The translations under genes were made by a program, and so were the position numbers. Shown here piece by piece: positions 2,151 to 60,293 of a stretch of DNA of 64,000 nt. Where the stretch lies: positions 8,494,001-8,558,000 of the forward strand of contig CM068761.1 in the NCBI GenBank assembly GCA_035084275.1, read 5' to 3'. Below the pieces are notes generated by a model. That model searched no databases, had not been told where the DNA came from, and saw only the letters and a program-made list of their open reading frames with translations. Each line of letters starts with the position of its first letter. Position 1 is the stretch's first letter. Source of the DNA: Hydrolagus colliei (taxonomy: Eukaryota).

Positions 2151-2298
2151 TTTATCAAGGTCTTCAGGTTGACACATTATTCAATGTTACCATGAACCAA
2201 ATTTTGAAATCCGGGCAGTAAATTGGTTCAAATTTGCAAGATGCTACATCTGCTGTTCAGAACAAGGATTCCTATTGGACGATGGAAGCCGGAGGAGA

Positions 2299-2306
2299 AT
2301 TTGCAT
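2299..2306 (+). promoter_or_regulatory. Ig promoter octamer ATTTGCAT (cluster A)
   Basis: Perfect octamer in light-chain orientation, 132 nt upstream of the ATG, followed by a CACCTG E-box. Same position in all four complete clusters. Confidence 0.85.
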
Positions 2307-2430
2307 CAATTGTGAATTCAACTGGACTTGCATCACCTGATGGTTCTTAAGGAGAAGTCTACAATCGAGCAGTAAAGTGGCTTTTGTCTGTGAATCACTG
2401 ATTTCTCTGATGTTCATCAAACTGTTCACA

Positions 2431-5294
2431 ATGGGCGATTGGCTCCGAGTTCTGGCCACTTTGCTCCTGTGTCTGCATGGTAAGCGCTGCGGAATCCGCA
2501 CTGATCTCAATCAGCTTCACTTTGTACAGTTAGTTCTACAGTGTGACCTATCTACAGTGTGACTTATCTACAGTGTGACTTATCTGTGACTTGTTATTTC
2601 TTCAGGAACAACCGCAGCTGTTACCCTGACTCAGCCACCGTCCATCTCAACCTCCCCGGGAAACACCGTCAAGATCACCTGTACCATGTCCGGAGGCAGC
2701 ATCGGCAGCTACTACACGAGCTGGTACCAGCAGAAGCCTGGCAGCGCCCCTGTGTTTGTTTGGTATGAGTACAGTAGTAGCTCCACCAGAGGTCAGGGGA
2801 TTCCTGATCGATTCACTGGTTCTGTGGACTCATCGAGCAGCGCCATGCATTTAACCATCAGCGGTGTGCAGCCGGAGGACGCCGCCGATTACTACTGTGG
2901 TGTCTGGTATAGCAGCAGCTATCCCTTCATCTTTGGTACAGGGACCAAGCTGATTTTGAAAAGTAAGTAATCTTGTTTCGACTTTAGATGATAATTGTGA
3001 TCACGTCAGGAGGACGTCCAAATATAATTGTATGTTTGTCTGTATTCGATATTGTTTCACACGCTTTCTGTGATAGTCACATCTGGTTTCCTAATGATAA
3101 ACCTTTTATGTGGAAATCGGAATTTTTAAAGAATCAAACACACGATACCTGATGTTAACTGAAATTCTGTGAAGAATTTGGACGGATATTACAGCCAACT
3201 AACAATGGTAAAAAGGTGGAGAAGGACTGACATAAGCGAAGATGAGATAATCGTGGTGATATTTATACTTAACATTCTGAAGGCTTGAAGATGTCAGATT
3301 CACTGAAGCACCGCTTAGAGATCCTGATAAAGAATGAGCTACACCAGGGAAATTAGTTCACACTTCACGCCTGAGATTGAAGTTAAATCTCTTTGTGCCA
3401 GATTATTTAATTTCTATGTTTACTTGTTAACCTCTTTCCCCAGTCTGTCAGCACGAAGTGATGTTTAAAAGAATCTCCATCATAAGGAGATCAACAGTAT
3501 ATTTCCATTTGGTGACTGTCGCTGGTGTCTAATGGACCGATTGGTGAGCGGTTCAATCTCAGAGGGAACCAGATACCCTGAAAATAGTGTTCGTCCGTGA
3601 CTAACTGATCATTTTGAAAATTTAAACTTCTTTGAGACTGAGTAACATTATGTGTAACCAATATATGGATGATATAGAATAACTCTTGCCCAGTTTGTTC
3701 TCAGCATTAGTACGCATTCAAATCTAATCAATTCGTTTTAGAATAATTCAAATGTTATAATCTGCTCCGTGTTATTGCCATAAACAGTCTTTGCATTTTA
3801 ACATTTTTCTATTCCAGAGTTCTATTCGGAGTTGTTCAAATATTTTAATTTCTCCCCATTACCCCGATTAAAATACATTTCTATTTTACCATTTATTGAA
3901 CGCATTTATCTTCAGATTTCTAATTTTACAAACGTATTATTTTCTCCCAATTCCGTGGTTGATGTCGCTAAGGGCAGCACCATTGGAGAGACTCAATAAT
4001 ATCATGGTTTTCACCACAAGTTGCTGCAGTTGGTCAGATGGGAATCATTCCTCATTAAAGACAGAGGCTGAGCGCCGGCTCAATCTGGTCAAAATACATT
4101 TTCTTCCTTGAAAATTAACTTTATTGTTGCCCTCAGGCATCATATGAAAGGGATTCCCATTTGCGTATTGTGATTTGTGTATTGTTAATTGTGACTTGTG
4201 TATTGTGCGCTGTTAATTATGAATTAAAATCAGCAAATACGGTGCCAAATAAATTATTGTGAAATCGGAAGCCCCTTTCTGTAACCAATCAAACATTGGA
4301 TTCTGATTGTGCTCTTAAATAGTTTTTCAGTGCAGAGTGTTTGGACAAAAGGACAACGTTCATTTTCGTCCTATTTTCAGGATCTTACTCTTTTTACAAA
4401 CTCTATCGAATTAATAATGATGTTTCACTGCGCCTCCCGCCACATAATCCTTGTGACGCGACGTTTAGTGTCTAGTGTTATTTCTTATGATTGTATTTAC
4501 TAATTAGGTGAATTGAGGAAAAGTTTAACGTTTGCCCACCACTGCAAAAAAAACCTATAATAAATTGGTCATTTCAATCCACGACAGTTTGTGAGACACT
4601 GCCTTGCGCAATTGGCTGCCTACAGTATATTTTGACAAATTTAAGACGCCAAGAGCACTATATCAAATGCGAGGATTATTATGATTATTGTTGAGCTCTC
4701 AGCAGCAAACTATTGATAGTATAATAATGAACGGTGTGTGATGGTGTATGATGACCCCCAACACTCATTGTTCCCTTTATATTGTTACACTTGAACATTA
4801 CCGTCTAAAACTCTACACAAGAAAATATTTTACCATATACAGGAATATGAACTACTGTATAGGATTATTTATTGGTGATCCTGAAGTTTTGTCGTGCTAT
4901 TCAACTGTTCGATTGTAACTTAAAATGTTAAAAAATGAATTAAAAATTTTTTATCCACATTTTTGTTCCAGACCCACGGGCCCCCTCGGTGACGGTCCTT
5001 CCGCCGTCACCAGATCAAATCACAGCTAATTGCAAGGCGACCCTGGTGTGTCTGGTGAAAGATTTTAACCCGGGAGCTGTGGAGGTCAAGTGGACTGTGG
5101 ATGGCAGTGCCAGAAGTGAAAGTGTTGAAACGAGTGCGATCAAGCAGGAGGTGGACAACACGTACAGTGTGAGCAGTTATCTGACTCTGCCAGCCTCCGA
5201 GTGGGAGTCACACGAGCTGTATTCCTGTCTGGTCACACACGAGACTCGGGGGACTCCGCTCGAAAAAACCATCGCCAGATCCAGTTGTATCTAA
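2431..5294 (+). CDS. IGL: Ig light chain cluster A (lambda/type II, germline-joined VJ); exons 2431-2479 (leader), 2606-2962 (VJ), 4972-5294 (C); 242 aa
   Basis: Leader [20 protein letters not shown] with GT-AG phase-1 introns. V has ITC, WYQQKPG and DYYC fused in frame to J (FGTGTKL) with no RSS or spacer. C1-set domain ends ARSSCI. The spliced frame is open. Confidence 0.95.
2536..2592 (+). repeat. 16-bp tandem repeat (ctacagtgtgacYtat) in the leader intron
   Basis: About 3 units in A, B and D (126-nt intron) and about 2 units in C (110-nt intron). Confidence 0.8.
4545..4690 (+). mobile_element. 5'-truncated SINE in the J-C intron (orthologues at about 15625, 35135, 44145, 59535)
   Basis: Same core and tail as the promoter-proximal SINE. 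Confidence 0.7.
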
Positions 5295-11365: not shown

Positions 11366-13383
11366 CCAAAAGTATTATCTATCTGTTCATTTAATTTAAC
11401 AGACAATGTATTATGGAAGTATTCAGTTTAAAAATGACATCAGCGCTGGATTTTCCACGCATGTGCAAGTTATTTGACTTTGACTTGCCGTAAACGTGCA
11501 TGGGATCAGCTCATGGACAGAATTGAATACACGTGAGTGGGAACTCTGGGGGAAAGCTTCACTTGTGGACTGTTCTTCTTTTAGCGGGTTGTAACATAAC
11601 ACTATTCTTACACTCCCCGTTCCAATCTATATCACAATTTAGATGTCAGAGACGTGTCCAGAAGATGGGACTTGTGTGTTCTTTTTTCCTAAGAAGGAAA
11701 AGTAGATTCACAGCTGTTAATGTTTTATCAGAAAAAGCAGCAGCCGTAACTCACTGTGGCACTGATCTGGCTGTGATTCATACAGCGGCGACTTTCCGAA
11801 TGTTTTAAAGGGAATGTAACCGAAAAAATGTGTGGACAACCTGTGTGCGGATTTTCTTTCGTATTCTGTTTTGAATAGGTGTCATAACAATAAATGTATA
11901 AATATATACATTCAAAAATATTAAACCTATCTTTTGCAGTGACTTGGGACGACCTCCCGACGTGAAAGGCGCTTTGTAAGCTTAAATTTTTTATTGTTTT
12001 TTCCTACCACGACTGACTCCAGGAAAATTCCTTCGATCGAATAAGAAATAACTAGCATGAAGTCAAAACAAACCCAAATATGTCTATCTGTGTGTGTGAG
12101 GGATGGGTAACAGCAAATGACAATCGCTCTTAAAAATATCAGATTTAAGAACATGAAGTAACCATCTTGTATTTGTGCCAGGTTGAATGATAATTTCCCT
12201 GGGACTGGAATGGAATCCTGAGACTCGTCACGCTCCCCCTCTCTCAATCTTCCTCACACCACTTACCTTATTGTGGGAAGTACTAGCTCCAGGTAGGCTA
12301 CAGTCAAGGCATGGCCACTGGATTTGCCATTTGTGGCGTTGCGGTGGCGATGCCTTGACTGTAGAGGCCAAACACTCTATGTGATAACCCCCTGTCTCTG
12401 AAGTGTTGCTGTTCCCCAGGCTGGCTGATCAAGAGAGAGGTCACTGTAGTCAATGTTTGTAACGTTGCCTGAAAGAAACGTTCGTTTATCATCGGGCATG
12501 TGAGGCATTGGGCCGTGTCTGAGAGTATCCTAGCGTGAGGGCAAAGTTGGTACATGCCTGAATGTGAATTGGTGAAGCTATTTCAGAAATCGATAAACAG
12601 TATATACAATTTGAGGAACCTTGTCACCGGCTGCAATTCGTGACTTTCACAGCTGGGTATCTGTATCGATTCAGGTGTGACTTGTCAGTGTGTAAACTGT
12701 AACTAAATGAAACGTTGAAACTCATCTTTCATCGGAACAAGCTTCACAAGTGTATAAATCTCTTTGTACCTGGGCAAGCGAATCTTGCAGAATTCACATA
12801 CTGCAAAGCCGTGCACTACATGAACCACATACATATAACAGAATAAAATTTTCCACGATACAGCAAATAATTGATATTTGTGTTGTTTAAAAGAATACTG
12901 TTTCATACTGTAAATGAAAACTAGCATCATTATCTGATGTCCTGTAGCACAGTGTTTAGAGCACTCGTCGTAGAAACGAGAGACTTGGGTTCGACTCGAA
13001 GCAGGGCGAAACCTGCTCACGCCGAAACCTGCTCACGCCTTAAAAAATCCAATAATAAATTGATCACTTCAATTCACCACTGTTTGTTGGACAATGAGCG
13101 ACTGCGTTTCTTCCACATGTAACCTGAAGGTTTACTTTATAGTATATTCTGTGATGCGCTATGAGATGTCTAGAAGTTGTGAAAAGCGCCATATCAAATG
13201 GAAGATTATCATTATTTATTATTATATAATAAAACAATTTTCAGGTTGAAACGTAATGCAGAATTATCATCTTTACTGCCCATATATTGTGAGATATGGG
13301 CAGTAAAGTGGTTCAAATCTGCATGATGTTCCATCTGCTGTTCAGAACAAGGATTCCTATTGGACGATGGGAGCCGGAGGATA

Positions 13384-13391
13384 ATTTGCAT
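13384..13391 (+). promoter_or_regulatory. Ig promoter octamer (cluster B)
   Basis: ATTTGCAT 132 nt upstream of the ATG. Confidence 0.85.
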
Positions 13392-13515
13392 AATTTATGA
13401 ATTCAACTGGACTTGCATCACCTGATGGTTCTTAAGGAGAAGTTTACAATCGAGCAGTAAAGTTGCTTTTGTCTGTGAATCACTAATTTCTCTGATGTTC
13501 ATCAAACTGTTCACA

Positions 13516-16432
13516 ATGGGCGATTGGCTCCGTGTTCTGGCCGCTTTGCTCCTGTGTCTGCATGGTAAGCGCTGCGGAATCCGCACTGATCTCAATTAGC
13601 TTCACTTTGTACAGTTAGTTCAAAAGTGTGACCTATCTACGGTGTGACCTATCTACAGTGTGACTTATCTGTGACTTATTATTTCTCCAGGAACAACCGC
13701 AGCTGTTACCCTGACTCAGCCACCGTCCATCTCAACCTCCTCGGGAAACACCGTCAAGATCACCTGTACCATGTCCGGAGGCAGCATCGGCAGCTACTAC
13801 ACGAGCTGGTACCAGCAGAAGCCTGGCAGCGCCCCTGTGTTTGTTTGGTATGAGAGCTCCACCAGAGGTCAGGGGATTCCTGATCGATTCACTGGTTCTG
13901 TGGACTCATCGAACATGCATTTAACCATCAGCGGTGTGCAGTCGGAGGACGCCGCCGATTATTACTGTGGTGCCAAACTAGGCGGCAGCAATCCCCTCAT
14001 CTTTGGTAAAGGGACCAAGCTGAGTTTGAAAAGTAAGTGATCTTGTTTCAACATTGGATTATTATTGTGATCTAATTCTCCTACAGTTTCCACAAAAATA
14101 ACAAGAACAACGTTGCTCTTGTACAGAGCCTTTCAGGTCAGGAGGACGTCCAAAAATATTCGTATGTTTGTCTGTATTCGATATTATTTCACATGCTATC
14201 TGTGATATTCGCACCTGGTTGAAACCCTCGCAATGATAATGTGGAGATCGGAAATTTTAAAGAACCAAACACTCCAAACCTGACTTTAATTGAAAATCTG
14301 TGAAGAATGTCGACTAATAGTACAGCAAACTAACAAAGGTAAAAAGGTGGAGGCAGGAATGAAATTATCCAACAGGAGATAATCGTGGTGATATTTATCT
14401 TTAACAGTCTGAAGGACTAAAGATGTCAGATTCACTGTAGCACCGCTTAGAGACCCTGGTAAAGAATGAGCTACACCAGGGAAAAGAGTTCACACTTCAC
14501 ACCTGAGATTGAAGTTAAATCTCTTTGTGCCAGATTATTTAATTTCTATTTTTACCTGTTAACCTCTTTCCCCAGTTTTTCTCCCATCATAAGGAGATCA
14601 ACAGTATGTTTCCATCTGGTGACTGTCGCTGGGGTCTAATGGACCGATTGGTGAGCGGTTCAATCTCAGAAGGAACCTGATTCCCTGAAAATAATGTTCG
14701 TCTGTGACTAATTAATCATTTTGAAAATTTAAACTTGTTTGAGAGTGAGGAACATTATATGTAACTGATAGATGGATGATAGAGTATAACTGTAGGGGAC
14801 TACAGAATATTTTCAGAATAATTCTTATGTTGCCGTCTGCTCCATGTTATTGCCATAACCAGTTTTTGCATATTAATATCTTTTTCATTCCAGAGTTCTT
14901 TTCGAGTTTCTTCAATTTTATTTTCTCCCCATTACCCCCATTAAAATACATTTCGATTTTACCATTTATTGCTCACATTTATCTTCAGATTTCTAATTTT
15001 ACAAACGTATTATTTTCTCCCAATACCGTGGTTGATGTCGCTAAGGGCAGCACCATCGGAGAGACTCAATAATACCATGATTGTCATCACAAGTTGTTGC
15101 AGTTGGTCAGATGGGAATCATCGTTCATTGAAGACAGAGGCTGAGCGCCGGCTCAATCTGGTCAAAATACATTTTCTCCTTGAAAATTAACTTTATTATT
15201 TCCCTCAGGCATCATATTAAAGGGATTCCGATTTGTGTGTTGTGATTTGTTTATTGCGATTTATGTATTATGCGCTATTAATTATGAATTAAAATCAGCA
15301 AATACGGTGCCAAATAAATTATTGTGAAATCGGAAATTAATCGGAAGCCCCGCTCAGCAAAGAATCAAAGATTGGATTCTGATTGTGCTCCTGAAGTGTT
15401 TTAAGTGTAGTTGATGAGAAGGAAATCATTGATTTTATTCGTATTTTCAGGTTGTTACTCTCTATACAAACCCTATATGATTAATAATGATATTTCACTG
15501 TGCTTTCAATCAGCGGCTCCCGCCACGTACTCCTTGTATCGCGATGTTTAGTGTCTGGTGTTATTTCTTATGACAGTTGGTATTCATTACTTCAACACAG
15601 GACAATTTGTACATGTGTTCACCACTGCAAAAAGCCCTGTAATAAATTGGTCAGTTGAATCCACGAATTCTTGTGGGACAATGCTGTGCGCAATTCGCTG
15701 CCGTGTTTCGCCGAAATATGTACAGACAATTCACTTCATGGTATATTTTGCGAACATTGAGACGCCGAGAAGACGTCAAGAGCACTATATCAAATGCGAG
15801 GATTATTATCATTATTACTGGTAATCTCTCATCAGCAAACTATTGATGGTATAATAATGAATGGTGTGTGATGGTGTATGATGACCACAACACCCATTCT
15901 TCCCTCTACATTGCTACACTTTGTCACAATTGAAAAGTACCGTCTAAAACGCTGCACAAGAAAACGTTTTACCATTTACAGGAATGTGAAATACTGCATA
16001 GCGTTATTTATTGGTGATCCTGAAGTTTTGTCGTGCTATTGACCAATCGATTGTATATGAAGATGAAAAAAAAATAATTTAAACTTTTGTATCCACATTT
16101 TTGTTCCAGACCCACGGGCCCCTTCGATGACTATCCTTCCGCCGGCACTAGAACAAATCACAGCGAAGAGCAAGGCGACCCTGGTGTGTCTGGTGAATGA
16201 TTTTAACCCGGGAGCTGTGGAGGTCAAGTGGACTGTGGATGGCAGTGCCAGAAGTGAAGGTGTTGAAACGAGTGCGATCAAGCAGGAGGAGGACAACACG
16301 TACAGTGTGAGCAGTTATCTAACTCTGCCAGCCTCCGAGTGGGATTCACACGAGCTGTATTCCTGTCTGGTCAAACACGAGACTCGGGGGACTCCGCTCG
16401 AAAGAACCATCGCCAGATCTAGTTGTATCTAA
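13516..16432 (+). CDS. IGL: Ig light chain cluster B; exons 13516-13564, 13691-14032, 16110-16432; 237 aa; VJ is 15 nt shorter (in-frame deletions)
   Basis: Same exon structure and splice sites as A, open frame, CDR3 GAKLGGSNPLI. Confidence 0.93.
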
Positions 16433-30212: not shown

Positions 30213-32871
30213 TTTTGAGGGACCACCAAAGTGGTCAGCGGCTTGTGTTGTCTTTCCAATGTGAAATGTGCTCCATAAATGTAATTTTATTGTTGTTGTT
30301 CAGTCCCATATTTCTATGTTCTTTTAATAAGTTTGATCAGTTTAATCAAAATAATCCTAACGATGATAATGATAACTGGATACCTGGGATTAATCATCTG
30401 CTCCAATGACTTGAAACAAAATTCAATTATGACCACATGTCACAATGCACATGAAGAAGAAAACACTTTGTATCCTGTCCAGCAATGACACAATTAAAAT
30501 GTGCATTGACTTGAATAACCATTATGGCTGAGAAACTGTAAAATATTAGCATGCACAAATTGGCTTCCACATTTACCTAAATAATATACGACAGTGAAGC
30601 ATCACTTGAAACAAAAGTCATCATTAAATGAAAGGTACTTTCTCAAAGGTATTATTATTTATTCCATTTTTAATACACTACAAGTGTGAGCTTTTTTTTA
30701 TTGAAGGTCATTTTGGATTTCTATGCATGAGCAAATCATTTGATCTTGACCTGTCAAAAATGTGCATTGAATCATCGCATGCTTCCATACAAGCGAGTTT
30801 TCAAATTTGAAGACTTGAGTAGATCACTTTCTGAAATGCACTGGTGTGTATGTCCTACACTGGTGGAGGTTGCATCCTTTGGATTACACTTGAAACCAAA
30901 TACCATTTTCTTGTTAATTTGGAAATTAAGGATCCCATGTCACAATGCAAATGGGGAACAAAGCGTTTGGTGTCCTGGCCAACAATTGCCCCAAATAATA
31001 CTATCATTCATTTCAAGGCTGTTTGTGAAACATCACCATCCACTAATTTGCTGCTATATATTTCCAAACAGCATGTACTTTATATTCCGGGAAGCATATT
31101 GACAGGTCCTCTTGATATGAAACGTGCTTTGTCAAAAGCATTATCTGTTTATTTCATTTAACAGTAAATGTATTCTGGAAGTGTTCCGTTTAAAAATGAA
31201 TGCAGTGTTGGGTTTCCTACGCATGTGCAAGTTATTTTGACGTGTCCTAAATGTGCATGGAATCAGCGCATGGACAGAATTGAATACACGTGACTGGGAA
31301 CTCTGGGGGTAATCTTCACTTGAGCACTGTTCTTCTTTTAGCGTGTTGTGTAACATTAATCTGCTTTTACGCTTCCCGTTCCAATTAAATATCACAATCT
31401 GGACATGTCAATGACATGTCCAGAAGATGGGACTTATGTGTTTGTATATTGATGCTATTACATCTCTGTTCCCTGGAAGGAAAAGTAGATTAACAGCCGT
31501 TAACGTTTTATCAGAAAAAGCAATGGCTGCAAATTAATTCAGTGGCACTGATCTGGCTGTGATTCCACAGGATGATTCCAGTCTCTTTTAAAGGGAACAT
31601 AACCGCAAATATGCGTGGAAAATCTGTGTGTGGATTTTATGTGGTATTTTGTTTTGAATTGGTGTCATAACAAATATATTTATAAATATATACATGTTCT
31701 CAAAAATCTTAAACCCATCTTTTTTCGTACCACGACTGTCTCCAGGTAAATCCCTTCGATCGAATATGAAATAACTATCAAAAAGTCAAAACAAACCCAA
31801 ATATGTCTATATGAGTGTGTGAGGGACGGGTAATAGCAAATAACAGTTGCCCCTATCGATGAATGTGTTGCTGATCCCCAGGCTGGCTGATCAAGAGAGC
31901 CGGCACTGTATTCATTGTATATAACTTTGCCCGATAGAAACGTTCCTTTAACATCGGGGAATGTGAATTGCGCTATCATTCTGCTGTTAAATATATTACA
32001 TCTGCAGTGAGGCACAGTGCAGTAAAGGGAATCCTAGCGTGAGGGCAGGGCTGATACCTGCCAGAAGGTGAATTGGAAAAATTATTTCAGAAATAGACAA
32101 ACCGTATTTGTGAGGATCCATGTCACCGGCTGTGAAGTGTGACTTGCACGGCAGGGTCTGTATCAGTTGAGGTGTGGCTTGTCAGTGTGTAAACTGTAAC
32201 TGAATGAAAAGATGAAACTTTCCCAACTAGAAATTTTCTTTCATCGGAACAAGCTTCACGAGCGAATAAATCTCTTTGTACCTGGCCAAGCGAATCTTGC
32301 AGGATTCGAACACTGCAAAGCCGCGAACTACATAAATATTTAATAGAATAAGACTTTTCTACGACACTGTCAATAATTGAAGTTTGTGCTATTTAAAAAA
32401 AAACTGTTTCACACTGGAAACGAAACTAGCATCATTTTCTGATGTCCTGTAGGTCAGTTTAGAGCACTTGCCTTACAATCGAGTGACCTGGGTTTGATTC
32501 GTCAGGGCGAAACCTTGGGTAAATTACCTTACCCCACACGTCCGATAATAATCCCTAAAAAAACCCCCAATAATAATTTGGTCATTTCAAGACTGTTTGT
32601 TGGAAGCAACTTTGCGTAATTGGCTGCCCCTTTCTCTCACATATATACAGTATATTCTGTGAAGCGCTTTAGGACGTCTAGAAGACGTGAAAAGCACCAT
32701 TTTAAATGAAGTATGATGATTACTTTATCAAGGTCTTCAGGTTGACACATTATTCAATGTTACCATGAAACAAATTTTGAAATCCGGGCTGTAAATTGGT
32801 TCAAATTTGCAAGATGCTACATCTGCTGTTCAGAACAAGGATTCCTATTGGACAATGGGAGCCGGAGGATA

Positions 32872-32879
32872 ATTTGCAT
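32872..32879 (+). promoter_or_regulatory. Ig promoter octamer (cluster C)
   Basis: ATTTGCAT 132 nt upstream of the ATG. Confidence 0.85.
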
Positions 32880-33003
32880 CAATTGTGAATTCAACTGGAC
32901 TTGCATCACCTGATGGTTCTTAAGGAGAAGTTTACAATCGAGCAGTAAAGTGGCTTTTGTCTGTGAATCACTAATTTCTCTGATGTTCATCAAACTGTTC
33001 ACA

Positions 33004-35899
33004 ATGGGCGATTGGCTCCGAGTTCTGGCCGCTTTGCTCCTGTGTCTGCATGGTAAGCGCTGCGGAATCCGCCCTGATCTCAATTAGCTTCACTTTGTAC
33101 AGTTAGTTCTACAGTGTGACCTATCTACAGTGTGACTTATCTGTGACTTGTTATTTCTCCAGGAACAACCGCAGCTGTTACCCTGACTCAGCCACCGTCC
33201 ATCTCAACCTCCCCGGGAAACACCGTCAAGATCACCTGTACCATGTCCGGAGGCAGCATCGGCAGCTACTACACGAGCTGGTACCAGCAGAAGCCTGGCA
33301 GCGCCCCTGTGCTTGTTTGGTATGAGTACAGTAGTAGCTCCGGCAGAGGTCAGGGGATTCCTGATCGATTCACTGGTTCTGTGGACTCATCGAGCAGCTC
33401 CATGCATTTAACCATCAGCGGTGTGCAGCCGGAGGACGCCGCCGATTACTACTGTGGTGCCATATATAGCAGCAACTATCCCTTCATGTTTGGTAAAGGG
33501 ACCAAGCTGAGTTTGAAAAGTAAGTGATCTTATTTCGACTTTCGATGATTATTGTGATGACGTCAGGAGGACGTCCAAATATAATTGTATGTTTGTCTGT
33601 ATTCGATATTGTTTCACAGGTTTTCTGTGATATTCGCATCTGGTTTCCTAATGACAAACCTTTTATGTGGAAATCGGAACTTTTAAAGAATCAAGCACGA
33701 GAAACCTGATCTTAACTGAAAATATGTGAAGAACTTGCACGGATATTACAGCCAACTAACAATGGTAAACAGATGGAGAAGGAATGACATGAGCGAAGAA
33801 GAGATATTCGTGGTGATATTTATATTTAACAGTCTTCAGACGGAAGATGTCAGATTCACGGAAGCACCGCTTAGAGATCCCGGTAAAGAATGAGCTACAC
33901 CAGGGAAATTAGTTAACACTTCACATCTGAGATTGAAGTTAAATCTCTTTGTGCCAGATTATTTAATTTCTATGTTTACTTGTTAACCTCTTTTCCCAGT
34001 TTGTCAGCACGAAGTGATGTTTAAAAGAATCTCCATCATAAGGAGATCAACAGCATCTTTCCATCTGGTGACTGTCGCTGGGGTCTAATGCACCGATTGT
34101 TGAACGGTTCAACCTCAGAGGGAACCGGATTCCCTGAACATAGTGTTCGTCTGTGACTAACTGATCATTTTGAAAATTTAAACTTCTTTGAGACTGAGTA
34201 ACATTATGTGTAACTGATATATGGATGACATAGAATAGCTTGTAGCTGAGGTTGTTCTCAGCATCATTACGAATTCAAATCTAATGAATTATTTTTAGAA
34301 TAATTCAAATGTTATAATATGCTCCGTGTTATTGCCATAAACAGGCTTTGCATTTTAACTTTTTTCTATTCCAGAGTTCTATTCGGATTTCTTCAAATAT
34401 TTTATTTTCTCCCCATTACCCCCATTAAAATACATTTCAATTTTACCATTAATTGAACGCATTTATCTTCAGATTTCTAATTTTACAAACGTATTATATT
34501 CTCCGAATTCCGTGGTTGATGTCACTAAGGGCAGCATCATTGGGAGACTCAATAATATAATGGTTTTCACCACAAATTGCTGCAGTTGGTCAGATGGGAA
34601 TCATCGCTCATTAAAGACAGAGGCTGAGCGCCGGCTCAATCTGGTCAATATACATTTTCTTCCTTGAAAATTTACTTTATTTTTGCCCTCAGGCATCATA
34701 TTAAAGGGATTCCGATTTGTGTATAGTGTATTGTGATTTGTGTATTGTGTATAATGATTTGTGTATTGTTTATTGTGATTTGTGTATTTTGCGCTGTTAA
34801 TTATGAATTAAAATCAGCAAATACGGTGCCAAATTAATTAGTGTGAAATCGGAAGCCATTCACTGTAACCAATCAAACATTGGATTGTGATTGTGCTCTT
34901 TAATTGTTTTTCAGTGCTGAGTGTTTGGTCAAAAGGAAAACGTTTATTTTCTTCCTATTTTCAGTTTGTTACTCTCTGTGCAAACTCTATCGAAATAGTA
35001 ATGATGTTTCACTGCGCTTTCACTCAGCCGCTCCCGCCACGTACTCCTTGTGACGCGACACTTAGTGTCCAGTATTATTTCTTATGATTGTGTTTACTAA
35101 TTATTTGAATTGAGGAAAATTTGAACGTTTGCCCACCACTGCAAAAAAAAACTATAATAAATTGTCCTTTCAATCCACGACAGTTTGTGAGACACTGCTG
35201 TGCGCAATTGGCTGCCTACAGTATATTTTGAGAAATTTAAGACGCCAAGAGCACTATATGAAATGCGAGGATTATTATGATTATTGTTGAGCTCTCAGCA
35301 GCAAACTATTAATAGTGTAATAATGAACGGTGTGTGATGGTATATGATGACCCCCAACACTCATTGTTCCCTTTACATTGTTACACTTTGTCACAGTTGA
35401 AAAGTACCGTCTAAAACTGTACACAAGAAAATGTTTTACCATTTACAGGAATATGAAATACTGTATAGGATTATTTATTGGTGAACCTGAAATTTTGGCT
35501 TGCTATTCAACAGGTCGATTGTAAATTAAAATGTTAAAAAATGAATTTTAATTTTTTATCCACATTTTTGTTCCAGACCCACGGGCCCCTTCGGTGACTA
35601 TCCTTCCGCCGTCACCAGATCAAATCACAGCAAAGCGCAAGGCGACGCTGGTGTGTCTGGTGAATGATTTTACCCCGGGAGCTGTGGAGGTCAAGTGGAC
35701 TGTGGATGGCAGTGCCAGAAGTGAAGGTGTTGAAACGAGTGCGATCAAGCAGGAGGTGGACAACACGTACAGTGTGAGCAGTTATCTGACTCTGCCAGCC
35801 TCCGAGTGGGAGTCACACGAGCTGTATTCCTGTCTGGTCAGACACGAGACTCGGGGGACTCCGCTGGAAAAAACCATCGCCAGATCCAGTTGTATCTAA
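33004..35899 (+). CDS. IGL: Ig light chain cluster C; exons 33004-33052, 33163-33519, 35577-35899; 242 aa
   Basis: Intact GT/AG sites, open frame, CDR3 [11 protein letters not shown]. Confidence 0.95.
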
Positions 35900-44580: not shown

Positions 44581-44903
44581 ACCCACGGGTCCCTTCGGTG
44601 ACTGTCCTTCCGCCGTCACCAGATCAAATCACAGCAAAGAGCAAGGCGACCCTGGTGTGTCTGGTGAATAATTTTACCCCGGGAGCTGTGGAGGTCCAGT
44701 GGACTGTGGATGGCAGTGCCAGAAGTGAAGGTGTTGAAACGAGTGCAATCAAGCAGGAGGTGGACAACACGTACAGTGTGAGCAGTTATCTGACTCTGCC
44801 AGCCTCCGAGTGGGAGTCACACGAGCTGTATTCCTGTCTGGTCAAACACGAGACTCGGGGGACTCCGCTGGAAAAAACCATCGCCAGATCAAGTTGTATC
44901 TAA
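44581..44903 (+). pseudogene. IGL: Orphan Ig light chain C exon; its promoter, leader and VJ are deleted
   Basis: 323-nt open C exon with intact acceptor (taccag at 44575-44580). Upstream sequence jumps at 43543/43544 from pre-promoter DNA into mid J-C intron. Confidence 0.9.
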
Positions 44904-54578: not shown

Positions 54579-57258
54579 GCGGCATCTAACCTAGCTGCTC
54601 GTCCGCCACCGTCGCTATTTGCAGGGACCACCAAAGTGATCAGCGGCTTGGGATGTCTTTCCAATGTGAAAGGTGCTCCATAAATGTAATTTTGTTGTTC
54701 TTCAGTCGCTTATTTCTATGTTCTGTTAACAAGTTTGATCAGTTTTATCAAAATAATCCTAACTATGATAATGATAACTGGATACCTGGGCTAAATCATG
54801 CTCCAATGACTTTAAACAAAATCCAATTGTGACCACATGCCGTAATGCACATGAAGAAGAAAACACTTTGTATCCTGTCCAGCAATGACACAATTAAAAT
54901 TAACATTGACTTCAATAACCATCATGGCTGAGAAACTGTAAGATATTAATAGGCACAAATTGGCTTCCACATTTGCCTAAATAATATACGCCATACATCC
55001 AGTAAAGCATCACTTGAAAAGAAAAGTCGTCCTTAAATGAAAGGTACTTTCTCAAAGATATTATTAATTATTTAATTTTTAATACCCTTTTCTTATTGAA
55101 GGTCCTTTTGGATTTCTATGCATTAGCAAATCATTTAATCTTGACCTGTCAAAAATGTACATTGAATGATCACATGCTTCCATACAAGCGAGTTTTCAAA
55201 TTTGAAGACTTGAGTAGATCACCTTCTGAAATGCACTGGTGTGTATGTCCTACACTGGTGGAGGTGCCATCCTTTGGATTACACTTCAACCCAAATACCA
55301 TTTTCTTGTTAATTTGGAAGCTAAGGATCCCATGTCACAATGCAAATGGGGAACAAAGCGTTTGGTGTCCTGGCCAACAATTGCCCCAAATAAAACTATC
55401 ATTCATTTCAAGGCTGTTTGTGAAACATCACCATACACTGATTTGCTGCTACATTTTTCCAAACAGCATGTACAGTATATTCCGTGAAGCATCGTGACAG
55501 GTCCTCTTAATACGAAACGTGCTTTGTCAAAAGTATTATCTATTTATTTAATTTAACAGTAAATGTTTTATGGAAGTGTGCAGTTTAAAAATGAATGCAG
55601 TGTTGGGTTTTCTACGCATGTGCAAGTTACTTTGACGTATCCTAAATGTGCATGGGATCAGCGCATGGACAGAATTGAACACACGTGAGTGGGAACTCTG
55701 GGGGAAATCTTCACTTGAGGACTGTTCTTCTTTTAGCGCGTTGTGTAACATTAATCTGCTTTTACGCTTCCCGTTCCAGTCTATATCACAATTTCCATGT
55801 CAATGACATGTCCAGAAGATGGGACGTATGTGTTTGTATATTGATGCGATTACATCTCTGTTCCCTGGAAGGAAAAATAGATTAACAATATGTTTTTAGC
55901 AGAAAATGCAGTGGCTGCAAATTAATTCACTGTGGCACTGATCTGGCTGTGATTTACACAGGATGATTCCAATCTCTTTTAAAGGGAACGTAATCGAAAA
56001 AATGTGTGGACAACCTGTGTGTGGATTTTATTCGGTATTTTGTTTTGAATTGGTGTCATAACAAATATATTTAAAAATATATGCATGTTTTTAAAAAATC
56101 ATAAACCTATCTTTTTTCGTACCACGACTGTCTCCAGGTAAATCCCTTCGATCGACCAAAAAATAACTGTCCAAAAGTCAAAACAAACCCAAATAGGTGT
56201 CTATGTGCGTGTGAGGGACGGGTAATAGCAAATGACAGTCGCCCCTATCGATGAATGTGTTGCTGTTCCCCAGGCTGGCTGATCAAGAGAGCCGGCACTG
56301 TATTCATTGTATATAACTTTGCCTGAAAGGAACGTTCCTTTATCATCGGGGAACGTGAATCGCGCTATCATTCTGCTGTTAAATATATTACATCTGCAGT
56401 GAGGCACAGTGCAGTAAAGGGAATCCTAGCGTGAGGGCAGGGCTGGTACCTGCCAGAAGGTGAATGGGAAAAGTATTTCAGAAACAGACACATCGTATTT
56501 GTGAGGATCCCTGTCACCGGCTGTGAAGTGTGACTTGCACGGCAGGGTCTGTATCAGTTCAGGTGAGGCTTGTCAGTGTGTAAACTGCAACTGAATCAAA
56601 AGATGAAACTTTCCCAACTACAAATTATCTTTCGTCGGAACAATCTTCACAAGCGAATAAATCTCTTTGTACCTGTGCAAGCGAATCTTGCAGGATTCAC
56701 ACAGTGCAAAGCGGTGAACTACAGAATATTTAATAGAATAAGACCACGACACTGTCAATAATTGAAGTTTGTGCTGTTTAAAAAAAACGCTGTTTCACAC
56801 TGCAAATAAAAACTAGCTTCATTTTCTGATGTCCTGTAGGTCAGTTTAGAGCACTTGCCTTACAATCGAGTGACCTGGGTTTGATTCGTCAGGGCGAAAC
56901 CTTGGGTAAATTTCCTTACCCCACACGCCCGATAATAATCCCTAAAAACGCCCCCCAAAATAAATTGGTCATTTCTCGACTGTTTGTTGGAAACAACTTT
57001 GCGTAATTGGCTGCCCGTTTCGCTCACATATATACAGTATATTCTGTGAAGCGCTATCGGACGTCTAGAAGACGTGAAAAGCACAATTTTAAATGAAGCA
57101 TTATTATTACTTTATCAAGGTCTTCAGGTTGACACATTATTCAATGTTACCATGAAACAAATTTTGAAATCCGAGCGGTAAATTGGTTCAAATTTGCAAG
57201 ATGCTACATCTGCTGTTCAGAACAAGGATTTCTATTGGACGATGGGAGCCGGAGGACA

Positions 57259-57266
57259 ATTTGCAT
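57259..57266 (+). promoter_or_regulatory. Ig promoter octamer (cluster D)
   Basis: ATTTGCAT 132 nt upstream of the ATG. Confidence 0.85.
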
Positions 57267-57390
57267 AAATTGTGAATTCAACTGGACTTGCGTCACCTGA
57301 TGGTTCTTAAGGAGAAGTTTACAATCGAGCAGTAAAGTGGCTTTTGTCTGTGAATCACTAATTTCTCTGATGTTCATCAAACTGTTCACA

Positions 57391-60293
57391 ATGGGCGATT
57401 GGCTCCGAGTTCTGGCCGCTTTGCTCCTGTGTCTGCATGGTAAGCGCTGCGGAATCCGCACTGATCTCAATTAGCGTCACTTTGTACAGTTAGTTCTGCA
57501 GTGTGACCTGTCTACAGTGTGATCTATCTACAGTGTGACTTATCTGTGACTTGTTATTTCTCCAGGAACAACCGCAGCTGTTACCCTGACTCAGCCACCG
57601 TCCATCTCAACCTCCCCGGGAAACACCGTCAAGATCACCTGTACCATGTCCGGAGGCAGCATCGGCAGCTACTACACGAGCTGGTACCAGCAGAAGCCTG
57701 GCAGCGCCCCTGTGTTTGTTTGGTATGAGTACAGTAGTAGCTCCACCAGAGGTCAGGGGATTCCTGATCGATTCACAGGTTCTGTGGACTCATCGAGCAG
57801 CGCCATGCATTTAACCATCAGCGGTGTGCAGCCGGAGGACGCCGCCGATTACTACTGTGGTGTCTGTTATGACAGCAGCTCTCCCTTCATCTTTGGTAAA
57901 GGGACCAAGCTGAGTTTGAAAAGTAAGTGATCTTGTTTCGACTTTAGCTGATTATTGTGATCAAGTCGGGAGGACGTCCAAATATAATTGTATGTTTGTC
58001 TGTATTCGATATTGTTTCACACGCTTTCTGTGATAGTCCCTTCTGGTTTCCTAATGATAAACCTTTTATGTGGAAATCGGAAATTTTAACGAATCAAACA
58101 CGGGAAACCTGATCTTAACTGAAAAGCTGTGAAGAATTTGGACGGATATTACAGCCAACTAACAATGGTAAAACGGAGGAGAAGGAATGACAGGAGCGAA
58201 GAAGAGATAATCGTGATGATATTTATATTTAACAGTCTGAAGGACTGAAGATGTCAGATTCACTGAAGCACCGGTTAGAGATCCTGCTAAAGAATGAGCT
58301 ACACCAGGGAAATGAGTTAACACTTCACATCTGAGATTGAAGTTAAATCTCTTCGTGCCAGATTATTTAATTTCTATGTTTACTTGTTAACCTCTTTCCC
58401 CAGTTTATGAGCACGAAGTGATGTTTAAAAGAATCTCCATAATAAGGAGATCAACAGCATCTTTCCATCTGGTGACTGTCGCTGGGGTCTAATGGACCGA
58501 TTGGTGAGCGGTTCAATCTCAGAGGGAACCGGATACCCTGAAAATAGTGTTCGTCCGTGACTAACTGATCCTTTTTAAAATTTAAATTTCTTTGAGACTG
58601 AGGAACATTATCTGTAACAGATATATGGATGATGTAGAATAACTGTAGCGGAGTTTGTTCTCAGCATTATTACGAATTCAAATCTAATGAATTCTTTTTA
58701 GAATAATTCAAATGTTATAATCTGCTCCGTGTTATTGCCATAAACAGACTTTGCATTTTAACATTTTTCTATTCCAGAGTTCTATTTGGATTTCTTCAAC
58801 TATTTTATTTTCTCTCCATTACCCCAATTAAAATACATTTCTATTTGACCATTAATTGAACGCATTTATCTTTAGATTTCTAATTTTACAAACGTGTTAT
58901 TGTCTCCCAATTCCGTGGTTGATGTCGCGAAGGGCAGCACCATTGGAGTTACTCAATAATATCATGGTTTTCACCACAAGTTGCTGCAGTTGGTCAGATG
59001 GGAATCATCGCTCATTAAAGACAGAGGCTGAGCGCCGGCTCAATCTGGTCAAAATACATTTTCTTCCTTGAAAATTAAATTTATTATTGCCCTCAGGCAT
59101 CATATTAAAGGGATTCCGATTTGTGTATTGTGTATGGTGATTTGTGTATTGTGTATTGTGTATTATGATTTGTGTATTTTGCGCTGTTAACTATGAATTA
59201 AAATCAGCAAATACGGTACCAAATAAATTATTGTGAAATCGGAAGCCCCTCTCTGTAACCAATCAAACATTGGATTCTGATTGTGCTCTTTAATTGTCTT
59301 TCAGTGCAGAGTGTTTGGTCAAACGGAAAACGTTTATTTTCGTCCTATTTTCAGTTTGTTACTCTCTATACAAACTCTATCGAATTAGTAATGATGTTTC
59401 ACTGCGCTTTCACTCAGCCGTTCCCGCCACATACTCCTTGTGACGCGACATTTAGTGTCTATTGTTAGTTCTTATGATTGTGTTTACTAATTATTTGAAT
59501 TGAGGAAAATTTGAATGTTTGCCCACCACTGCAAAAAAAACCTATAACAGATTGGTCCTTTCAATCCACGACAGTTTGTGAGACACTGCTGTGCGCAATT
59601 GGCTGCCTACATGTAGTATATTTTGAGAAATGTAAGACGCCAAGAGCACTGTATCAAATGCGAGGATTATGATGATTATTGTTGAGCTCTCAGCAGCAAA
59701 CTATTGATAGTATAATAATGAACGGTGTGTGATGGTGTATGATGACCCCAACACTCATTGTTCCCTTTACATTGTTACACTTTGTCACAGTTGAAAAGTA
59801 CCGTCTAAAACTCAACACAAGAAAATGTTTTACCATTTACAGGAATATGAAATACTGAAAAGGATTATTTATTGGTGATCCTGAAGTTTTGTGGTGCGAT
59901 TAAACAAGTCGATTGTAACTTAAAATGCTAAAAAAAAATGTATTATTTTTTATCCACATTTTTGTTCCAGACCCACGGGCCCCCACGGTGACTGTCCTTC
60001 CGCCGTCAACAGATCAAATCACAGCAAAGAGCAAGGCGACCCTGGTGTGTCTGGTGAATGATTTTAACCCTGGAGCTGTGGAGGTCAAGTGGACTGTGGA
60101 TGGCAGCGCCAGAAGTGAAGGTGTTGAAACGAGTGCGATCAAGCAGGAGGTGGACAACACGTACAGTGTGAGCAGTTATCTGACTCTGCCAGCCTCCGAG
60201 TGGGAGTCACACGATCTGTATTCCTGTCTTGTCACACACGAGACTCGGGGGACTCCGCTGTTAAAAACCATCGCCAGATCCAGTTGTATCTAA
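57391..60293 (+). CDS. IGL: Ig light chain cluster D; exons 57391-57439, 57566-57922, 59971-60293; 242 aa
   Basis: Intact GT/AG sites, open frame, CDR3 [11 protein letters not shown]. Confidence 0.95.

What the first reader, a model, noticed from the sequence alone, without database searches (positions are those of the whole stretch)
2899..2931. Germline CDR3 diversification by contiguous, amino-acid-changing substitutions resembling shark somatic hypermutation
Seen: all four CDR3s are 11 codons but differ ([44 protein letters not shown]; B 13969-14001, C 33456-33488, D 57859-57891). A versus C over the 357-nt VJ shows 12 nt differences in 9 codons, all amino-acid-changing, 6 of them in CDR3. 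A versus D shows 7 differences, 1 synonymous and 4 in CDR3. Many changes are adjacent runs: ac>gg (CDR2 of C), tgg>ata, ag>ga, and 7 consecutive mismatches between A and B (tggtata/aaactag). Established: type II/lambda clusters are pre-joined and so lack RAG/TdT diversity, and nurse-shark L-chain somatic hypermutation characteristically makes contiguous substitutions. Inference: CDR3 diversity is being written into the germline, by positive selection on paralogs or possibly by an AID-like or templated process acting in germ cells. That would be a heritable repertoire-building mechanism.
Basis: partly seen in the sequence, partly recalled or inferred. Interest (0 to 1): 0.78.

Follow-up and report, generated by a model that had tools for sequence, protein, structure and literature searches.

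The report
Germline-fused lambda clusters, variable CDR3
Four tandem, germline-fused antibody lambda light-chain genes of a chimaera (ratfish relative) are kept almost identical by gene conversion except for an 11-codon CDR3 that selection keeps different; this is a known feature of cartilaginous-fish light chains, and nothing points to a hypermutation-like process in germ cells.

Summary
All four CDR3 strings, the difference counts (A-C 12, A-D 7) and the contiguous runs are exactly as reported. CDR3 carries 0.52 substitutions per site, against about 0.22 in introns and flanks and 0.05 in the rest of the promoter-leader-VJ block (P=0.001 against neutral). Every variable CDR3 codon changes the amino acid.

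The window comes from a holocephalan: the best hit is a Hydrolagus colliei light chain (85%), not a shark chain. It holds four intact L-VJ-C lambda clusters plus a fifth C exon whose VJ has been deleted.

Silent sites and the leader intron of the VJ block are homogenised even between units whose introns differ by 14%. That means interlocus gene conversion, with CDR3 as an island that escapes it.

- Among the recent paralogs A/C/D, the contiguity is what the local density of differences predicts (P=0.10-0.36).
- CDR3 changes show no WRC/GYW bias (P=0.66).
- CDR1, the region richest in hotspots, is invariant.
- The adjacent introns are not elevated.

B's 7-nt run probably belongs to an older V subfamily, judged by indels and CDR3 motifs shared with other holocephalans. 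Shark and ray genomes show the same pattern, and a sevengill-shark pair reproduces it at nucleotide level. Verdict: ordinary and essentially known.

The parts
2899..2931 (+). CDR3 of cluster A ([11 protein letters not shown])
13969..14001 (+). CDR3 of cluster B (GAKLGGSNPLI); holds the 7-nt run against A
33456..33488 (+). CDR3 of cluster C ([11 protein letters not shown])
57859..57891 (+). CDR3 of cluster D ([11 protein letters not shown])
2258..2962 (+). Homogenised block of cluster A: promoter with octamer ATTTGCAT (2299-2306), leader exon 2431-2479, leader intron 2480-2605, fused VJ exon 2606-2962
13343..14032 (+). Homogenised block of cluster B (L 13516-13564, VJ 13691-14032). It is about 97% identical to A/C/D although its flanks are only 75-86% identical. 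It keeps a 9-nt shorter CDR2 and a 6-nt shorter FR3.
32831..33519 (+). Homogenised block of cluster C (L 33004-33052, VJ 33163-33519)
57218..57922 (+). Homogenised block of cluster D (L 57391-57439, VJ 57566-57922)
4972..5294 (+). C-lambda exon of cluster A (includes the stop codon)
16110..16432 (+). C-lambda exon of cluster B
35577..35899 (+). C-lambda exon of cluster C
59971..60293 (+). C-lambda exon of cluster D
44581..44903 (+). Fifth, orphan C-lambda exon (unit E, sister of B). Its ORF and splice acceptor are intact, but its promoter-L-VJ segment has been deleted.

Best explanation
The window is a tandem array of germline-joined immunoglobulin lambda (type II) light-chain clusters of a holocephalan. 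Each cluster is leader, fused VJ and C.

The clusters arose by duplication of an already joined unit. A/C/D are recent copies, about 7% diverged at neutral sites. B and its VJ-less sister E are older, at 13-25%.

Interlocus gene conversion, helped by purifying selection, keeps a block of about 700 bp (promoter, leader, leader intron, V up to FR3, and J) nearly identical in all four clusters.

The 33-nt CDR3 escapes this homogenisation and accumulates amino-acid replacements faster than neutral DNA. Copies that differ in CDR3 are favoured because, without V-J rearrangement, CDR3 diversity for this isotype can only be inherited, with somatic hypermutation adding to it later.

The contiguous look of the differences has two sources. 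One is the packing of many replacements into a few adjacent hypervariable codons. The other, for B, is old subfamily sequence left unconverted.

Shown: the anatomy, fusion of V and J, intact ORFs, homogenisation at silent and intronic sites, the CDR3 excess, and the absence of SHM signatures.
Inferred: that selection, and not a targeted input of variants, maintains the island; that B's patch is ancestral; that the genes are expressed.
For: - Isotype and organism: lambda-like V-set plus C1-set protein; best hits are a Hydrolagus colliei light chain (85%) and Callorhinchus milii chains (about 80%), several named lambda-1-like.
- Anatomy: four intact spliced ORFs with GT/AG sites and V-J contiguous in DNA. 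No RSS-like sites and no extra V fragments.
- Callorhinchus genomic clusters are also fused. A review states that lambda genes are germline-joined in all cartilaginous fishes studied (PMC5192425).
- Region-wise divergence: introns and flanks 6-8% (A/C/D) and 13-25% (B); the promoter-L-intron-V block 0-6% for every pair; CDR1 0/42; CDR3 12-36%.
- The 5' boundary is sharp, at about A 2258.
- Silent sites outside CDR3: pS 0-0.03 (0-2 differences in about 70 sites) for all pairs. About 10 would be expected for B pairs at the intron rate.
- Substitution load per site: 0.515 in CDR3, about 0.22 neutral, 0.049 in the block. A/C/D alone: 10 against 3.4 expected, P=0.0025. All nine variable codons change the residue.
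- Mosaicism: C shares GCC-A.A with B at codons 2-3, against the flank phylogeny. That pattern (AD|BC) is 2 of 15 variable CDR3 sites but only 11 of about 807 variable neutral sites.
- Generality: genome-encoded lambda paralogs of Heptranchias, Heterodontus and Hypanus have 87-100% identical FR1+FR2 and identical or near-identical CDR1. Nearly every such pair has different CDR3s, some also differing in length.
- Nucleotide replicate in Heptranchias: flank 18.1%, VJ before CDR3 1.8%, CDR3 24.2%, FR4 0%, J-C intron 5.9%.
- Precedent: germline-joined skate clusters show differences concentrated in CDRs, with replacement exceeding neutral substitutions (PMC2192082).
Against: - Only four copies, so about 17 CDR3 substitutions. 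Synonymous sites in CDR3 are too few (about 6-8) for a formal dN/dS test.
- In the Heptranchias pair, CDR3 divergence (24%) is not significantly above the old flank rate (18%, P=0.24). There, escape from conversion without positive selection would be enough.
- CDR1 and most of CDR2 are invariant. Selection for diversity alone does not predict that. It needs the extra assumptions of strong purifying selection on a canonical CDR1, which is in fact conserved from chimaera to ray, and of conversion.
- Codon 3 differs by three nucleotides between C and A/D within about 7% neutral divergence. That is easier to explain by a patch transfer or a multinucleotide event than by stepwise selection.
- B's overall V and C similarity to H. 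colliei P0001 is not higher than that of A/C/D. The 'old subfamily' reading therefore rests on the indels and short motifs only.
- Expression was not tested.
Confidence: 0.72

Rival explanations
1. Short-patch interlocus gene conversion, or another templated copying process, is the main source of the CDR3 differences. Pre-existing CDR3 variants from other lambda clusters, mostly outside this window, are shuffled into otherwise homogenised genes. Little new mutation is needed.
For: - Gene conversion clearly acts on the block.
- C shares the GCC-A.A patch with B, against the flank phylogeny.
- The triple change at codon 3 and B's 7-nt run look like block replacements.
- CDR3 motifs such as GVWY, GVIYSS, YDSS, GGS and GA[KR]L recur in other holocephalans and even in rays.
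- C's patch ATATATAGCAGCAA has a 14-nt exact inverted match 2.4 kb upstream (shuffle P=0.006 for that one copy).
Against: - No donor for the patches of A, B or D exists in the window; the longest outside matches are 10-11 nt, which is chance level.
- The 14-nt match lies in low-complexity sequence, and both loci would have had to change towards each other starting from only 7-8 nt of prior homology.
- Most differences are single-nucleotide singletons private to one copy: 10 of the 15 variable sites.
- Donors outside the window could not be examined.
Confidence: 0.15
2. CDR3 is simply unconstrained and escapes conversion. Its divergence is old neutral divergence that the rest of the block has lost, with no positive selection.
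For: - For B against the others, CDR3 divergence (30-36%) is within about 2-fold of its flank divergence (13-25%).
- In the Heptranchias pair, CDR3 at 24% is not different from the flank at 18% (P=0.24).
Against: - Within A/C/D, CDR3 has 10 substitutions against 3.4 expected at the neutral rate (P=0.0025).
- No variable codon is purely synonymous.
- Reading frame, length (11 codons) and the flanking Cys and FGxG are preserved in all four copies.
- The model gives no reason why conversion tracts should skip 33 nt that have homogenised sequence on both sides in Heptranchias.
Confidence: 0.08
3. An AID-like, shark-SHM-like mutator acts on the joined VJ in germ cells and writes tandem substitutions into CDR3. 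This is the reader's exotic option, and it is close to the 'soma-to-germline' idea.
For: - Some CDR3 differences are contiguous: ag>ga, tgg>ata and the 7-nt run.
- The CDRs are rich in AGC/AGY codons, with a non-significant trend of AGY over TCN serine codons in CDRs relative to FRs.
- Shark SHM does produce tandem changes (PMC5931798).
Against: - Within A/C/D, run structure fits random placement given the density (P=0.10-0.36).
- No WRC/GYW enrichment among CDR3 changes (2 of 10 against a 21% baseline, P=0.66).
- CDR1 has the densest hotspots and no change.
- The leader intron and the 5' part of the J-C intron are not elevated.
- No purely synonymous codon difference in CDR3, so selection is needed in any case.
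- The only significant run is 7 nt, longer than the 2-4 nt of shark tandem SHM, and it sits in the old unit B.
- The Heptranchias CDR3 differences are 7 separate runs with a single doublet.
Confidence: 0.03
4. Each CDR3 stems from an independent ancient RAG-mediated V-J joining in germ cells, so the differences are junctional.
For: - RAG-like germline joining is documented for nurse-shark kappa-type genes (PMC2193156).
- Germline CDR3 lengths vary from 5 to 12 residues among lambda clusters of Callorhinchus and several elasmobranchs. That could reflect separate old joining events at deeper levels of the family.
Against: - All four window CDR3s are 11 codons long, with an invariant CCC at codon 9.
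- Most differences lie in codons 2-8. By comparison with other vertebrate lambda chains (my own knowledge, not tested here) these are V-encoded, not at the J boundary.
- A/C/D are duplicates 6-8 kb long, about 93% identical, and already joined.
- No RSS or split segments anywhere in the window.
- The fused state is shared with Callorhinchus and with all lambda genes studied.
Confidence: 0.02

Closest known systems
Germline-joined type II (lambda) light-chain clusters of cartilaginous fishes (sandbar shark, nurse shark NS3, skate, ratfish)
   Same: L-VJ-C cluster organisation repeated in tandem; V and J fused in germline DNA with no RSS; lambda-like V and C domains; diversity carried by multiple inherited clusters (review PMC5192425).
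   Different: Nothing essential. This is another holocephalan locus. The closest public protein is a Hydrolagus colliei light chain at 85% identity, so the species or these particular clusters are not in the protein database searched.
[quoted passage not shown] 1995, PMC2192082)
   Same: There is no combinatorial or junctional diversity. Differences between germline clusters concentrate in CDRs, and replacement substitutions exceed silent ones. That is the same evolutionary signature as here.
   Different: It is a different isotype (sigma-cart/type I) with at least 89 clusters. Here, among close paralogs, the variation is almost entirely in CDR3, while CDR1 and CDR2 are held constant.
Concerted evolution with diversifying selection at antigen-binding codons (interlocus gene conversion in multigene immune families; positive selection on germline V-gene CDRs, Tanaka and Nei 1989, cited from my own knowledge)
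   Same: Silent sites and an intron are homogenised relative to the flanks, the tract boundary is sharp, and the binding-site codons stay divergent.
   Different: Because the VJ is pre-joined, the selected island is CDR3 itself. In rearranging loci CDR3 is made somatically.
Shark somatic hypermutation with tandem substitutions (Lee et al. 2002, as cited in PMC5931798)
   Same: Only a superficial likeness: some adjacent nucleotide differences in a light-chain CDR.
   Different: No hotspot bias; no spread into the introns, CDR1 or CDR2; no excess of runs once density is accounted for. The one long run is 7 nt, against 2-4 nt for SHM tandems.
RAG-mediated V-J joining in germ cells (Lee et al. 2000, PMC2193156)
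   Same: It explains how fused VJ genes can originate, and it may underlie the CDR3 length classes seen across the family.
   Different: The four copies here share one join: same length and a conserved junction codon. They differ mainly in the part of CDR3 expected to be V-encoded. No split relatives are present.

Membership tests
Germline-joined Ig lambda (type II) light-chain cluster of Chondrichthyes | Encodes a V-set domain followed by a C1-set domain, with lambda-type similarity | tested here: met
   Pfam V-set E=5e-20 and C1-set E=3.8e-26. The top hits are holocephalan and elasmobranch light chains, many of them named lambda-1-like.
Germline-joined Ig lambda (type II) light-chain cluster of Chondrichthyes | Cluster organisation: one leader, one V(J) and one C within a few kb, repeated many times | tested here: met
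   Four L-VJ-C units, each about 2.9 kb from ATG to stop, spaced 11-24 kb apart on one strand, plus one orphan C exon.
Germline-joined Ig lambda (type II) light-chain cluster of Chondrichthyes | V and J contiguous in genomic DNA, in frame, with no RSS or spacer | tested here: met
   A single 357-nt (B: 342-nt) exon runs from FR1 through FGxGTKL to a GT donor. No heptamer/nonamer pairs anywhere in the window.
Germline-joined Ig lambda (type II) light-chain cluster of Chondrichthyes | Expressed as functional light chains | not testable with these tools
   ORFs, splice sites and the octamer promoter element are intact. No transcript data for this species were available. The H. colliei cDNA P0001 is only 85% identical.
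Footprint of AID-driven (shark-type) hypermutation | Mutations preferentially at WRC/GYW hotspots | tested here: not met
   2 of 10 polarised CDR3 changes fall at hotspots, against a 21% positional baseline (P=0.66). For comparison, non-coding DNA gives 14% against 11%.
Footprint of AID-driven (shark-type) hypermutation | Excess of 2-4 nt tandem substitutions over the background | tested here: not met
   In non-coding DNA, runs of 2 or more are 7-10% of runs for A/C/D pairs. The CDR3 run structure within A/C/D fits random placement (P=0.10-0.36). Only B's 7-nt run deviates (P=0.002), and it is longer than SHM tandems. Power is low, with about 7 events in A/C/D.
Footprint of AID-driven (shark-type) hypermutation | Acts over the whole transcribed V region and the flanking introns, including CDR1 and CDR2 | tested here: not met
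   CDR1 is 0/42 in all pairs, the leader intron is below the neutral rate, and the first 200 nt of the J-C intron are at the neutral rate.
Interlocus gene conversion / concerted evolution | Silent and intronic sites in the tract are much less diverged than the flanking non-coding DNA | tested here: met
   pS 0-0.03 in VJ outside CDR3, and leader intron 3.6-6.3% for B pairs, against 13-25% in the flanks. Replicated in Heptranchias: 1.8% against 18.1%.
Interlocus gene conversion / concerted evolution | Discrete tract boundary and phylogenetic incongruence between tract and flanks | tested here: met
   B against A/C/D drops from 22-38% to about 3% at about A 2258. Inside the block, B is no further from A/C/D than they are from each other.
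Independent germline RAG joinings (Lee et al. 2000 type) | Differences confined to the V-J junction, variable length, P/N-like nucleotides, closely related split genes | tested here: not met
   Equal length of 11 codons, an invariant junction-side codon 9, differences spread over codons 2-11, and no split segments or RSS.

The most novel reading that the evidence does not exclude
The CDR3 islands are not maintained by selection alone. They are fed by a germline process that introduces clustered, multi-nucleotide changes specifically at CDR3, such as micro-conversion or short template switching from nearby or paralogous sequence. Three observations hint at this: the C-specific 14-nt inverted match 2.4 kb upstream, the B/C shared patch, and the triple change at codon 3. 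This would be a heritable, locally targeted diversification mechanism for non-rearranging antibody genes.
Probability: 0.07. Interest if true: 0.7.

Novelty: new member of a known kind. Interest (0 to 1): 0.2.

Why it matters
Germline-joined lambda clusters are the one antibody gene system in which CDR3 is inherited and not made by RAG and TdT. How their CDR3 repertoire evolves is therefore a real question about the limits of non-rearranging immunity.

This window gives a clean small example. Gene conversion keeps the scaffold uniform, including silent sites and an intron, while a 33-nt binding loop is kept different. The same architecture appears in a sevengill shark.

That is useful confirmation, in a holocephalan and with genomic context, of what was inferred in the 1990s from skate and shark clones. 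It does not reveal a new mechanism. In particular it gives no support for germline hypermutation or soma-to-germline transfer.

Tried and rejected
1. Search for templated donors of each CDR3 patch elsewhere in the window, both strands. A, B and D gave only chance-level matches of 10-11 nt. C gave a 14-nt exact inverted match at 31046-31059 (shuffle P=0.006 for that copy alone). I rejected it as evidence because it is low-complexity sequence and both loci would have had to change towards each other.

2. A first hotspot count that called a site 'hot' if any copy had the motif. This inflates calls at variable sites, so I replaced it with polarised singleton changes and an intronic baseline.

3. 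Alternative gapped alignments of the A/B 7-nt run as a compensated frameshift, tried by hand. They did not reduce the number of differences.

4. Orthology of B with H. colliei P0001 by overall similarity. Not supported: the C domain is 90/107 identical for B and 94-96/107 for the others, and the V framework is 80/90 against 80-82/90. Only the indels and CDR3 motifs link them.

5. The idea that B regained its VJ by repair of an E-like deletion. Rejected because B's J-C intron, which lies inside the interval deleted in E, is as diverged from A/C/D as the rest of B.

6. RSS scan and low-stringency tblastn for hidden V or J segments. Nothing beyond the four VJ and five C exons.

7. The sandbar-shark lambda genomic paper (PMC47676) is not held in the library. 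For Anderson 1995 only the abstract and references are held.

8. Serine AGY versus TCN codon bias in CDRs versus FRs. The trend is in the expected direction but is not significant in any copy (P=0.08-0.39).
Full report
WHAT IS THERE

The window (64 kb, no N) is a head-to-tail array of long paralogous units, all on the + strand. It holds four immunoglobulin light-chain clusters.
- A: leader 2431-2479, fused VJ exon 2606-2962, C exon 4972-5294.
- B: 13516-13564, 13691-14032, 16110-16432.
- C: 33004-33052, 33163-33519, 35577-35899.
- D: 57391-57439, 57566-57922, 59971-60293.

All four give intact spliced ORFs with GT/AG sites. A fifth intact C exon (about 44581-44903, unit E) has no leader or VJ.

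The protein has a V-set and a C1-set domain. Its best database hits are light chains of Hydrolagus colliei (85%) and Callorhinchus milii (about 80%), followed by 'lambda-1-like' chains of sharks and rays. The source is therefore a holocephalan (chimaera), not a shark, and the isotype is lambda/type II.

V and J are contiguous in the DNA. A scan found no RSS-like heptamer/nonamer pairs, and low-stringency tblastn found no further V or J pieces. Callorhinchus genomic clusters are fused in the same way. A review states that lambda (type II) genes are germline-joined in all cartilaginous fishes studied (PMC5192425).

CHECK OF THE OBSERVATION

This covers the four CDR3 translations, the 357-nt VJ exon, the 12 A-C differences in nine codons (all replacements, six in CDR3), the 7 A-D differences (one silent, four in CDR3), and the named contiguous changes, including the 7-nt A/B run at 2905-2911.

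The excess is statistically real. CDR3 needs at least 17 substitutions on 33 sites (0.515 per site). Introns and flanks carry about 0.22 per site, and the rest of the block carries 0.049. That gives P=0.001 against neutral DNA and 2e-12 against the block. For the three recent paralogs A/C/D alone it is 10 substitutions against 3.4 expected (P=0.0025).

Neutral divergence is about 7% among A/C/D and 13-25% between B and the others. Yet a block of about 700 bp, from about 170 bp upstream of the ATG through the leader, the leader intron and V to the end of FR3, and again J, differs by only 0-6% in every pair, B included.

The 5' edge is sharp. B against A/C/D falls from 22-38% to about 3% near A-coordinate 2258, just upstream of the Ig octamer at 2299-2306.

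The low divergence holds at silent sites. Outside CDR3 there are 0-2 synonymous differences in about 70 synonymous sites (pS 0-0.03) for every pair. It also holds in the leader intron, at 3.6-6.3% for B pairs. Protein-level constraint cannot produce that, so the block evolves in concert by interlocus gene conversion. CDR3 is an island of divergence inside or at the edge of this block. CDR1 is invariant (0/42 in all pairs).

Tandem substitutions. In about 3,400-3,700 aligned non-coding positions per pair, with gap-adjacent columns removed, runs of 2 or more make up 7-10% of mismatch runs for A/C/D pairs and 17-19% for B pairs. The longest runs are 3-4 nt.

In CDR3 I conditioned on the number of differences and placed them at random among the 33 positions.
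- A-C: runs 1, 3, 1, 1; P=0.10.
- A-D: runs 1, 2, 1; P=0.33.
- C-D: P=0.36.
- Only the comparisons involving B deviate: the 7-nt run has P=0.002, and the 6-nt run against D has P=0.019. Both reflect one patch.

Hotspots. Of ten CDR3 changes that can be polarised, two sit at WRC/GYW, against a 21% positional baseline (P=0.66).

Regional spread. CDR1 has the highest hotspot density of the exon (12 of 42 positions) and no change at all. The leader intron is below the neutral rate, and the first 200 nt of the J-C intron are at the neutral rate.

Shark tandem SHM events are 2-4 nt long (PMC5931798), so the 7-nt run does not resemble them either.

WHAT THE 7-NT RUN IN B PROBABLY IS

B belongs to an older unit type. 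Its sister is the VJ-less unit E (90.8% identical over 9 kb).

B keeps a CDR2 three codons shorter than that of A/C/D. That is the length seen in every other holocephalan chain examined, so the 'YSS' insertion of A/C/D is the derived state. B also has an FR3 two codons shorter ('SSN-MHLTI'). It shares this with H. colliei P0001 and with Callorhinchus P0007 and P0013; P0012 has a similarly shortened FR3 ('DSSMHLTI').

In that short-FR3 group, B's CDR3 residues recur: GARL in P0001, GAWL in P0013 and GAWYGGS in P0007, against B's GAKLGGS.

The most economical reading is that B's frameworks were overwritten by conversion from the A/C/D type, while its indels and the 5' half of its CDR3 remain from its original V. 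This is inference. Overall similarity does not single out P0001 as B's ortholog, although concerted evolution within species would produce that result anyway.

Non-coding identity between the window and Callorhinchus is 67-78%. The B split (75-86%) is therefore old but probably younger than the split between the genera.

INDEPENDENT RAG JOININGS

Germline joining by RAG is documented for nurse-shark NS4 genes (PMC2193156). The 5-12-residue range of germline CDR3 lengths in Callorhinchus, Heptranchias, Pristis, Hypanus and Heterodontus may reflect separate joins deep in the family.

Within the window it does not explain the differences.
- All four CDR3s are 11 codons long, with an invariant codon 9.
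- Most changes lie in codons 2-8. By comparison with lambda chains of other vertebrates (my own knowledge, not tested here), these are V-encoded.
- A/C/D are duplicates of an already joined unit.

GENERALITY

Among genome-encoded lambda paralogs of other species, pairs with 87-100% identical FR1+FR2 and identical or near-identical CDR1 almost always have different CDR3s, some also of different length. One Hypanus pair shares its CDR3. Examples are Heptranchias AVRLSSSVAFI and GATLSSAAAFN on 100% identical frameworks, and Heterodontus AALLGSTAAFI and AAASSGAYI.

The CDR1 'T[ML][11 protein letters not shown]' is conserved from chimaera to shark to ray. Purifying selection therefore also explains why CDR1 does not vary. 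Ray CDR3s (GVIYSSTSPFT, GVWYDSSPYAFT) closely resemble those in the window.

At nucleotide level, the Heptranchias pair L002/L003 gives 18.1% divergence in the 5' flank and leader intron, 1.8% in VJ before CDR3, 24.2% in CDR3, 0% in FR4 and 5.9% in the first 540 nt of the J-C intron. The 8 CDR3 differences fall in seven separate runs, with one doublet and one silent change. CDR3 is significantly above its local block (P=8e-5) but not above the old flank rate (P=0.24). There the island has homogenised sequence on both sides. That argues that conversion events covering CDR3 are either not fixed or not completed.

MECHANISM

The best-supported account has four steps.
1. A joined L-VJ-C unit duplicates.
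2. Recurrent interlocus gene conversion, together with purifying selection, keeps the promoter, the leader and the V scaffold (including CDR1) uniform.
3. CDR3 escapes homogenisation.
4. At least in A/C/D, CDR3 is replaced about three times faster than neutral DNA.

The third and fourth steps follow because clusters with different CDR3s are favoured when no somatic junctional diversity exists.

The contiguity of the differences is a by-product. Many replacements are packed into adjacent hypervariable codons (3-5 and 7-8), and in B an old patch is retained.

Ordinary patch conversion probably contributes. C shares GCC-A.A with B against the flank tree, a pattern seen at 2 of 15 variable CDR3 sites but only 11 of about 807 variable neutral sites. 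The three-nucleotide difference at codon 3 is also hard to reach stepwise in the time available.

What remains uncertain is the balance between new replacements fixed by selection, shuffling of old variants, and plain neutral escape. Four copies cannot settle it.

COMPARISON WITH WHAT IS KNOWN, AND VERDICT

This is a member of the germline-joined lambda/type II cluster family. All structural criteria were met here; expression could not be tested.

Its evolutionary signature is the one reported for germline-joined skate type I clusters: differences preferentially in CDRs, with replacement exceeding neutral substitutions (PMC2192082).

The idea that germline V genes bear a hypermutation-like imprint also exists already, as the controversial soma-to-germline hypothesis (for example PMC5704389). 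Nothing here supports it.

The one modestly fresh detail is how cleanly the homogenised block and the CDR3 island are resolved in genomic context, in a holocephalan and again in a hexanchiform shark.

Novelty: new member of a known kind. Interest: low (0.2).

Noticed in passing
window 41544-46107 (unit E); junction near 43539-43547; C exon about 44581-44903: A fifth cluster unit, sister of B (90.8% identity over 9 kb), has lost about 1.68 kb: promoter, leader, VJ and the first ~1 kb of the J-C intron (equivalent to B 13332-15008). The two flanking blastn alignments overlap by 9 bp at the junction, possibly microhomology. Its C exon ORF and splice acceptor are intact. The 5' breakpoint lies within a few bases of the 5' edge of the homogenised block (about A 2258). 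Whether this orphan C exon is ever spliced to cluster C's VJ, about 11 kb upstream, is unknown.
   Followed up: partly
window 31046-31059 (minus strand) and 33461-33474: C's CDR3 patch ATATATAGCAGCAA covers both C-specific changes. It has a 14-nt exact inverted match 2.4 kb upstream in the same unit. The homologous upstream sites in A and D differ (AAAAATG[A/T]AGCAGCAA). Shuffle P=0.006 for that copy, but the sequence is low-complexity. It is probably chance; if real, it would be a candidate short template switch.
   Followed up: partly
window 2768-2788 (CDR2 of A) and the equivalents in C and D; B 13761 region: A/C/D carry a derived 9-nt insertion (TACAGTAGT, 'YSS') in CDR2. It is absent from B and from all other holocephalan lambda chains examined. 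B has a 6-nt shorter FR3, shared with H. colliei P0001 and several Callorhinchus chains. These indels survive inside the otherwise homogenised exon.
   Followed up: partly
window 4972-5294, 16110-16432, 35577-35899, 44581-44903, 59971-60293: The C exons are partly homogenised as well. For B against the others, pS is 0.064-0.10, below B's intron divergence of about 0.14. pN of 0.03-0.06 is fairly high for a constant domain.
   Followed up: no
window about 8000-10000, 18000-21000, 24000-30000, 38000-40000, 46000-54000, 62000-64000: The spaces between clusters have strongly positive GC skew (up to 0.48) and purine-rich low-complexity sequence. These stretches are part of the duplicated units.
   Followed up: no
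window 2299-2306, 13384-13391, 32872-32879, 57259-57266: The Ig octamer ATTTGCAT sits about 125 bp upstream of each leader ATG, inside the homogenised block. It fits functional V promoters.
   Followed up: no
window 2537-2575 and the equivalents (leader intron): The leader intron contains a short tandem repeat (CTACAGTGTGAC[CT]TAT, 2-3 copies). Cluster C has one copy fewer, a 16-nt deletion.
   Followed up: no
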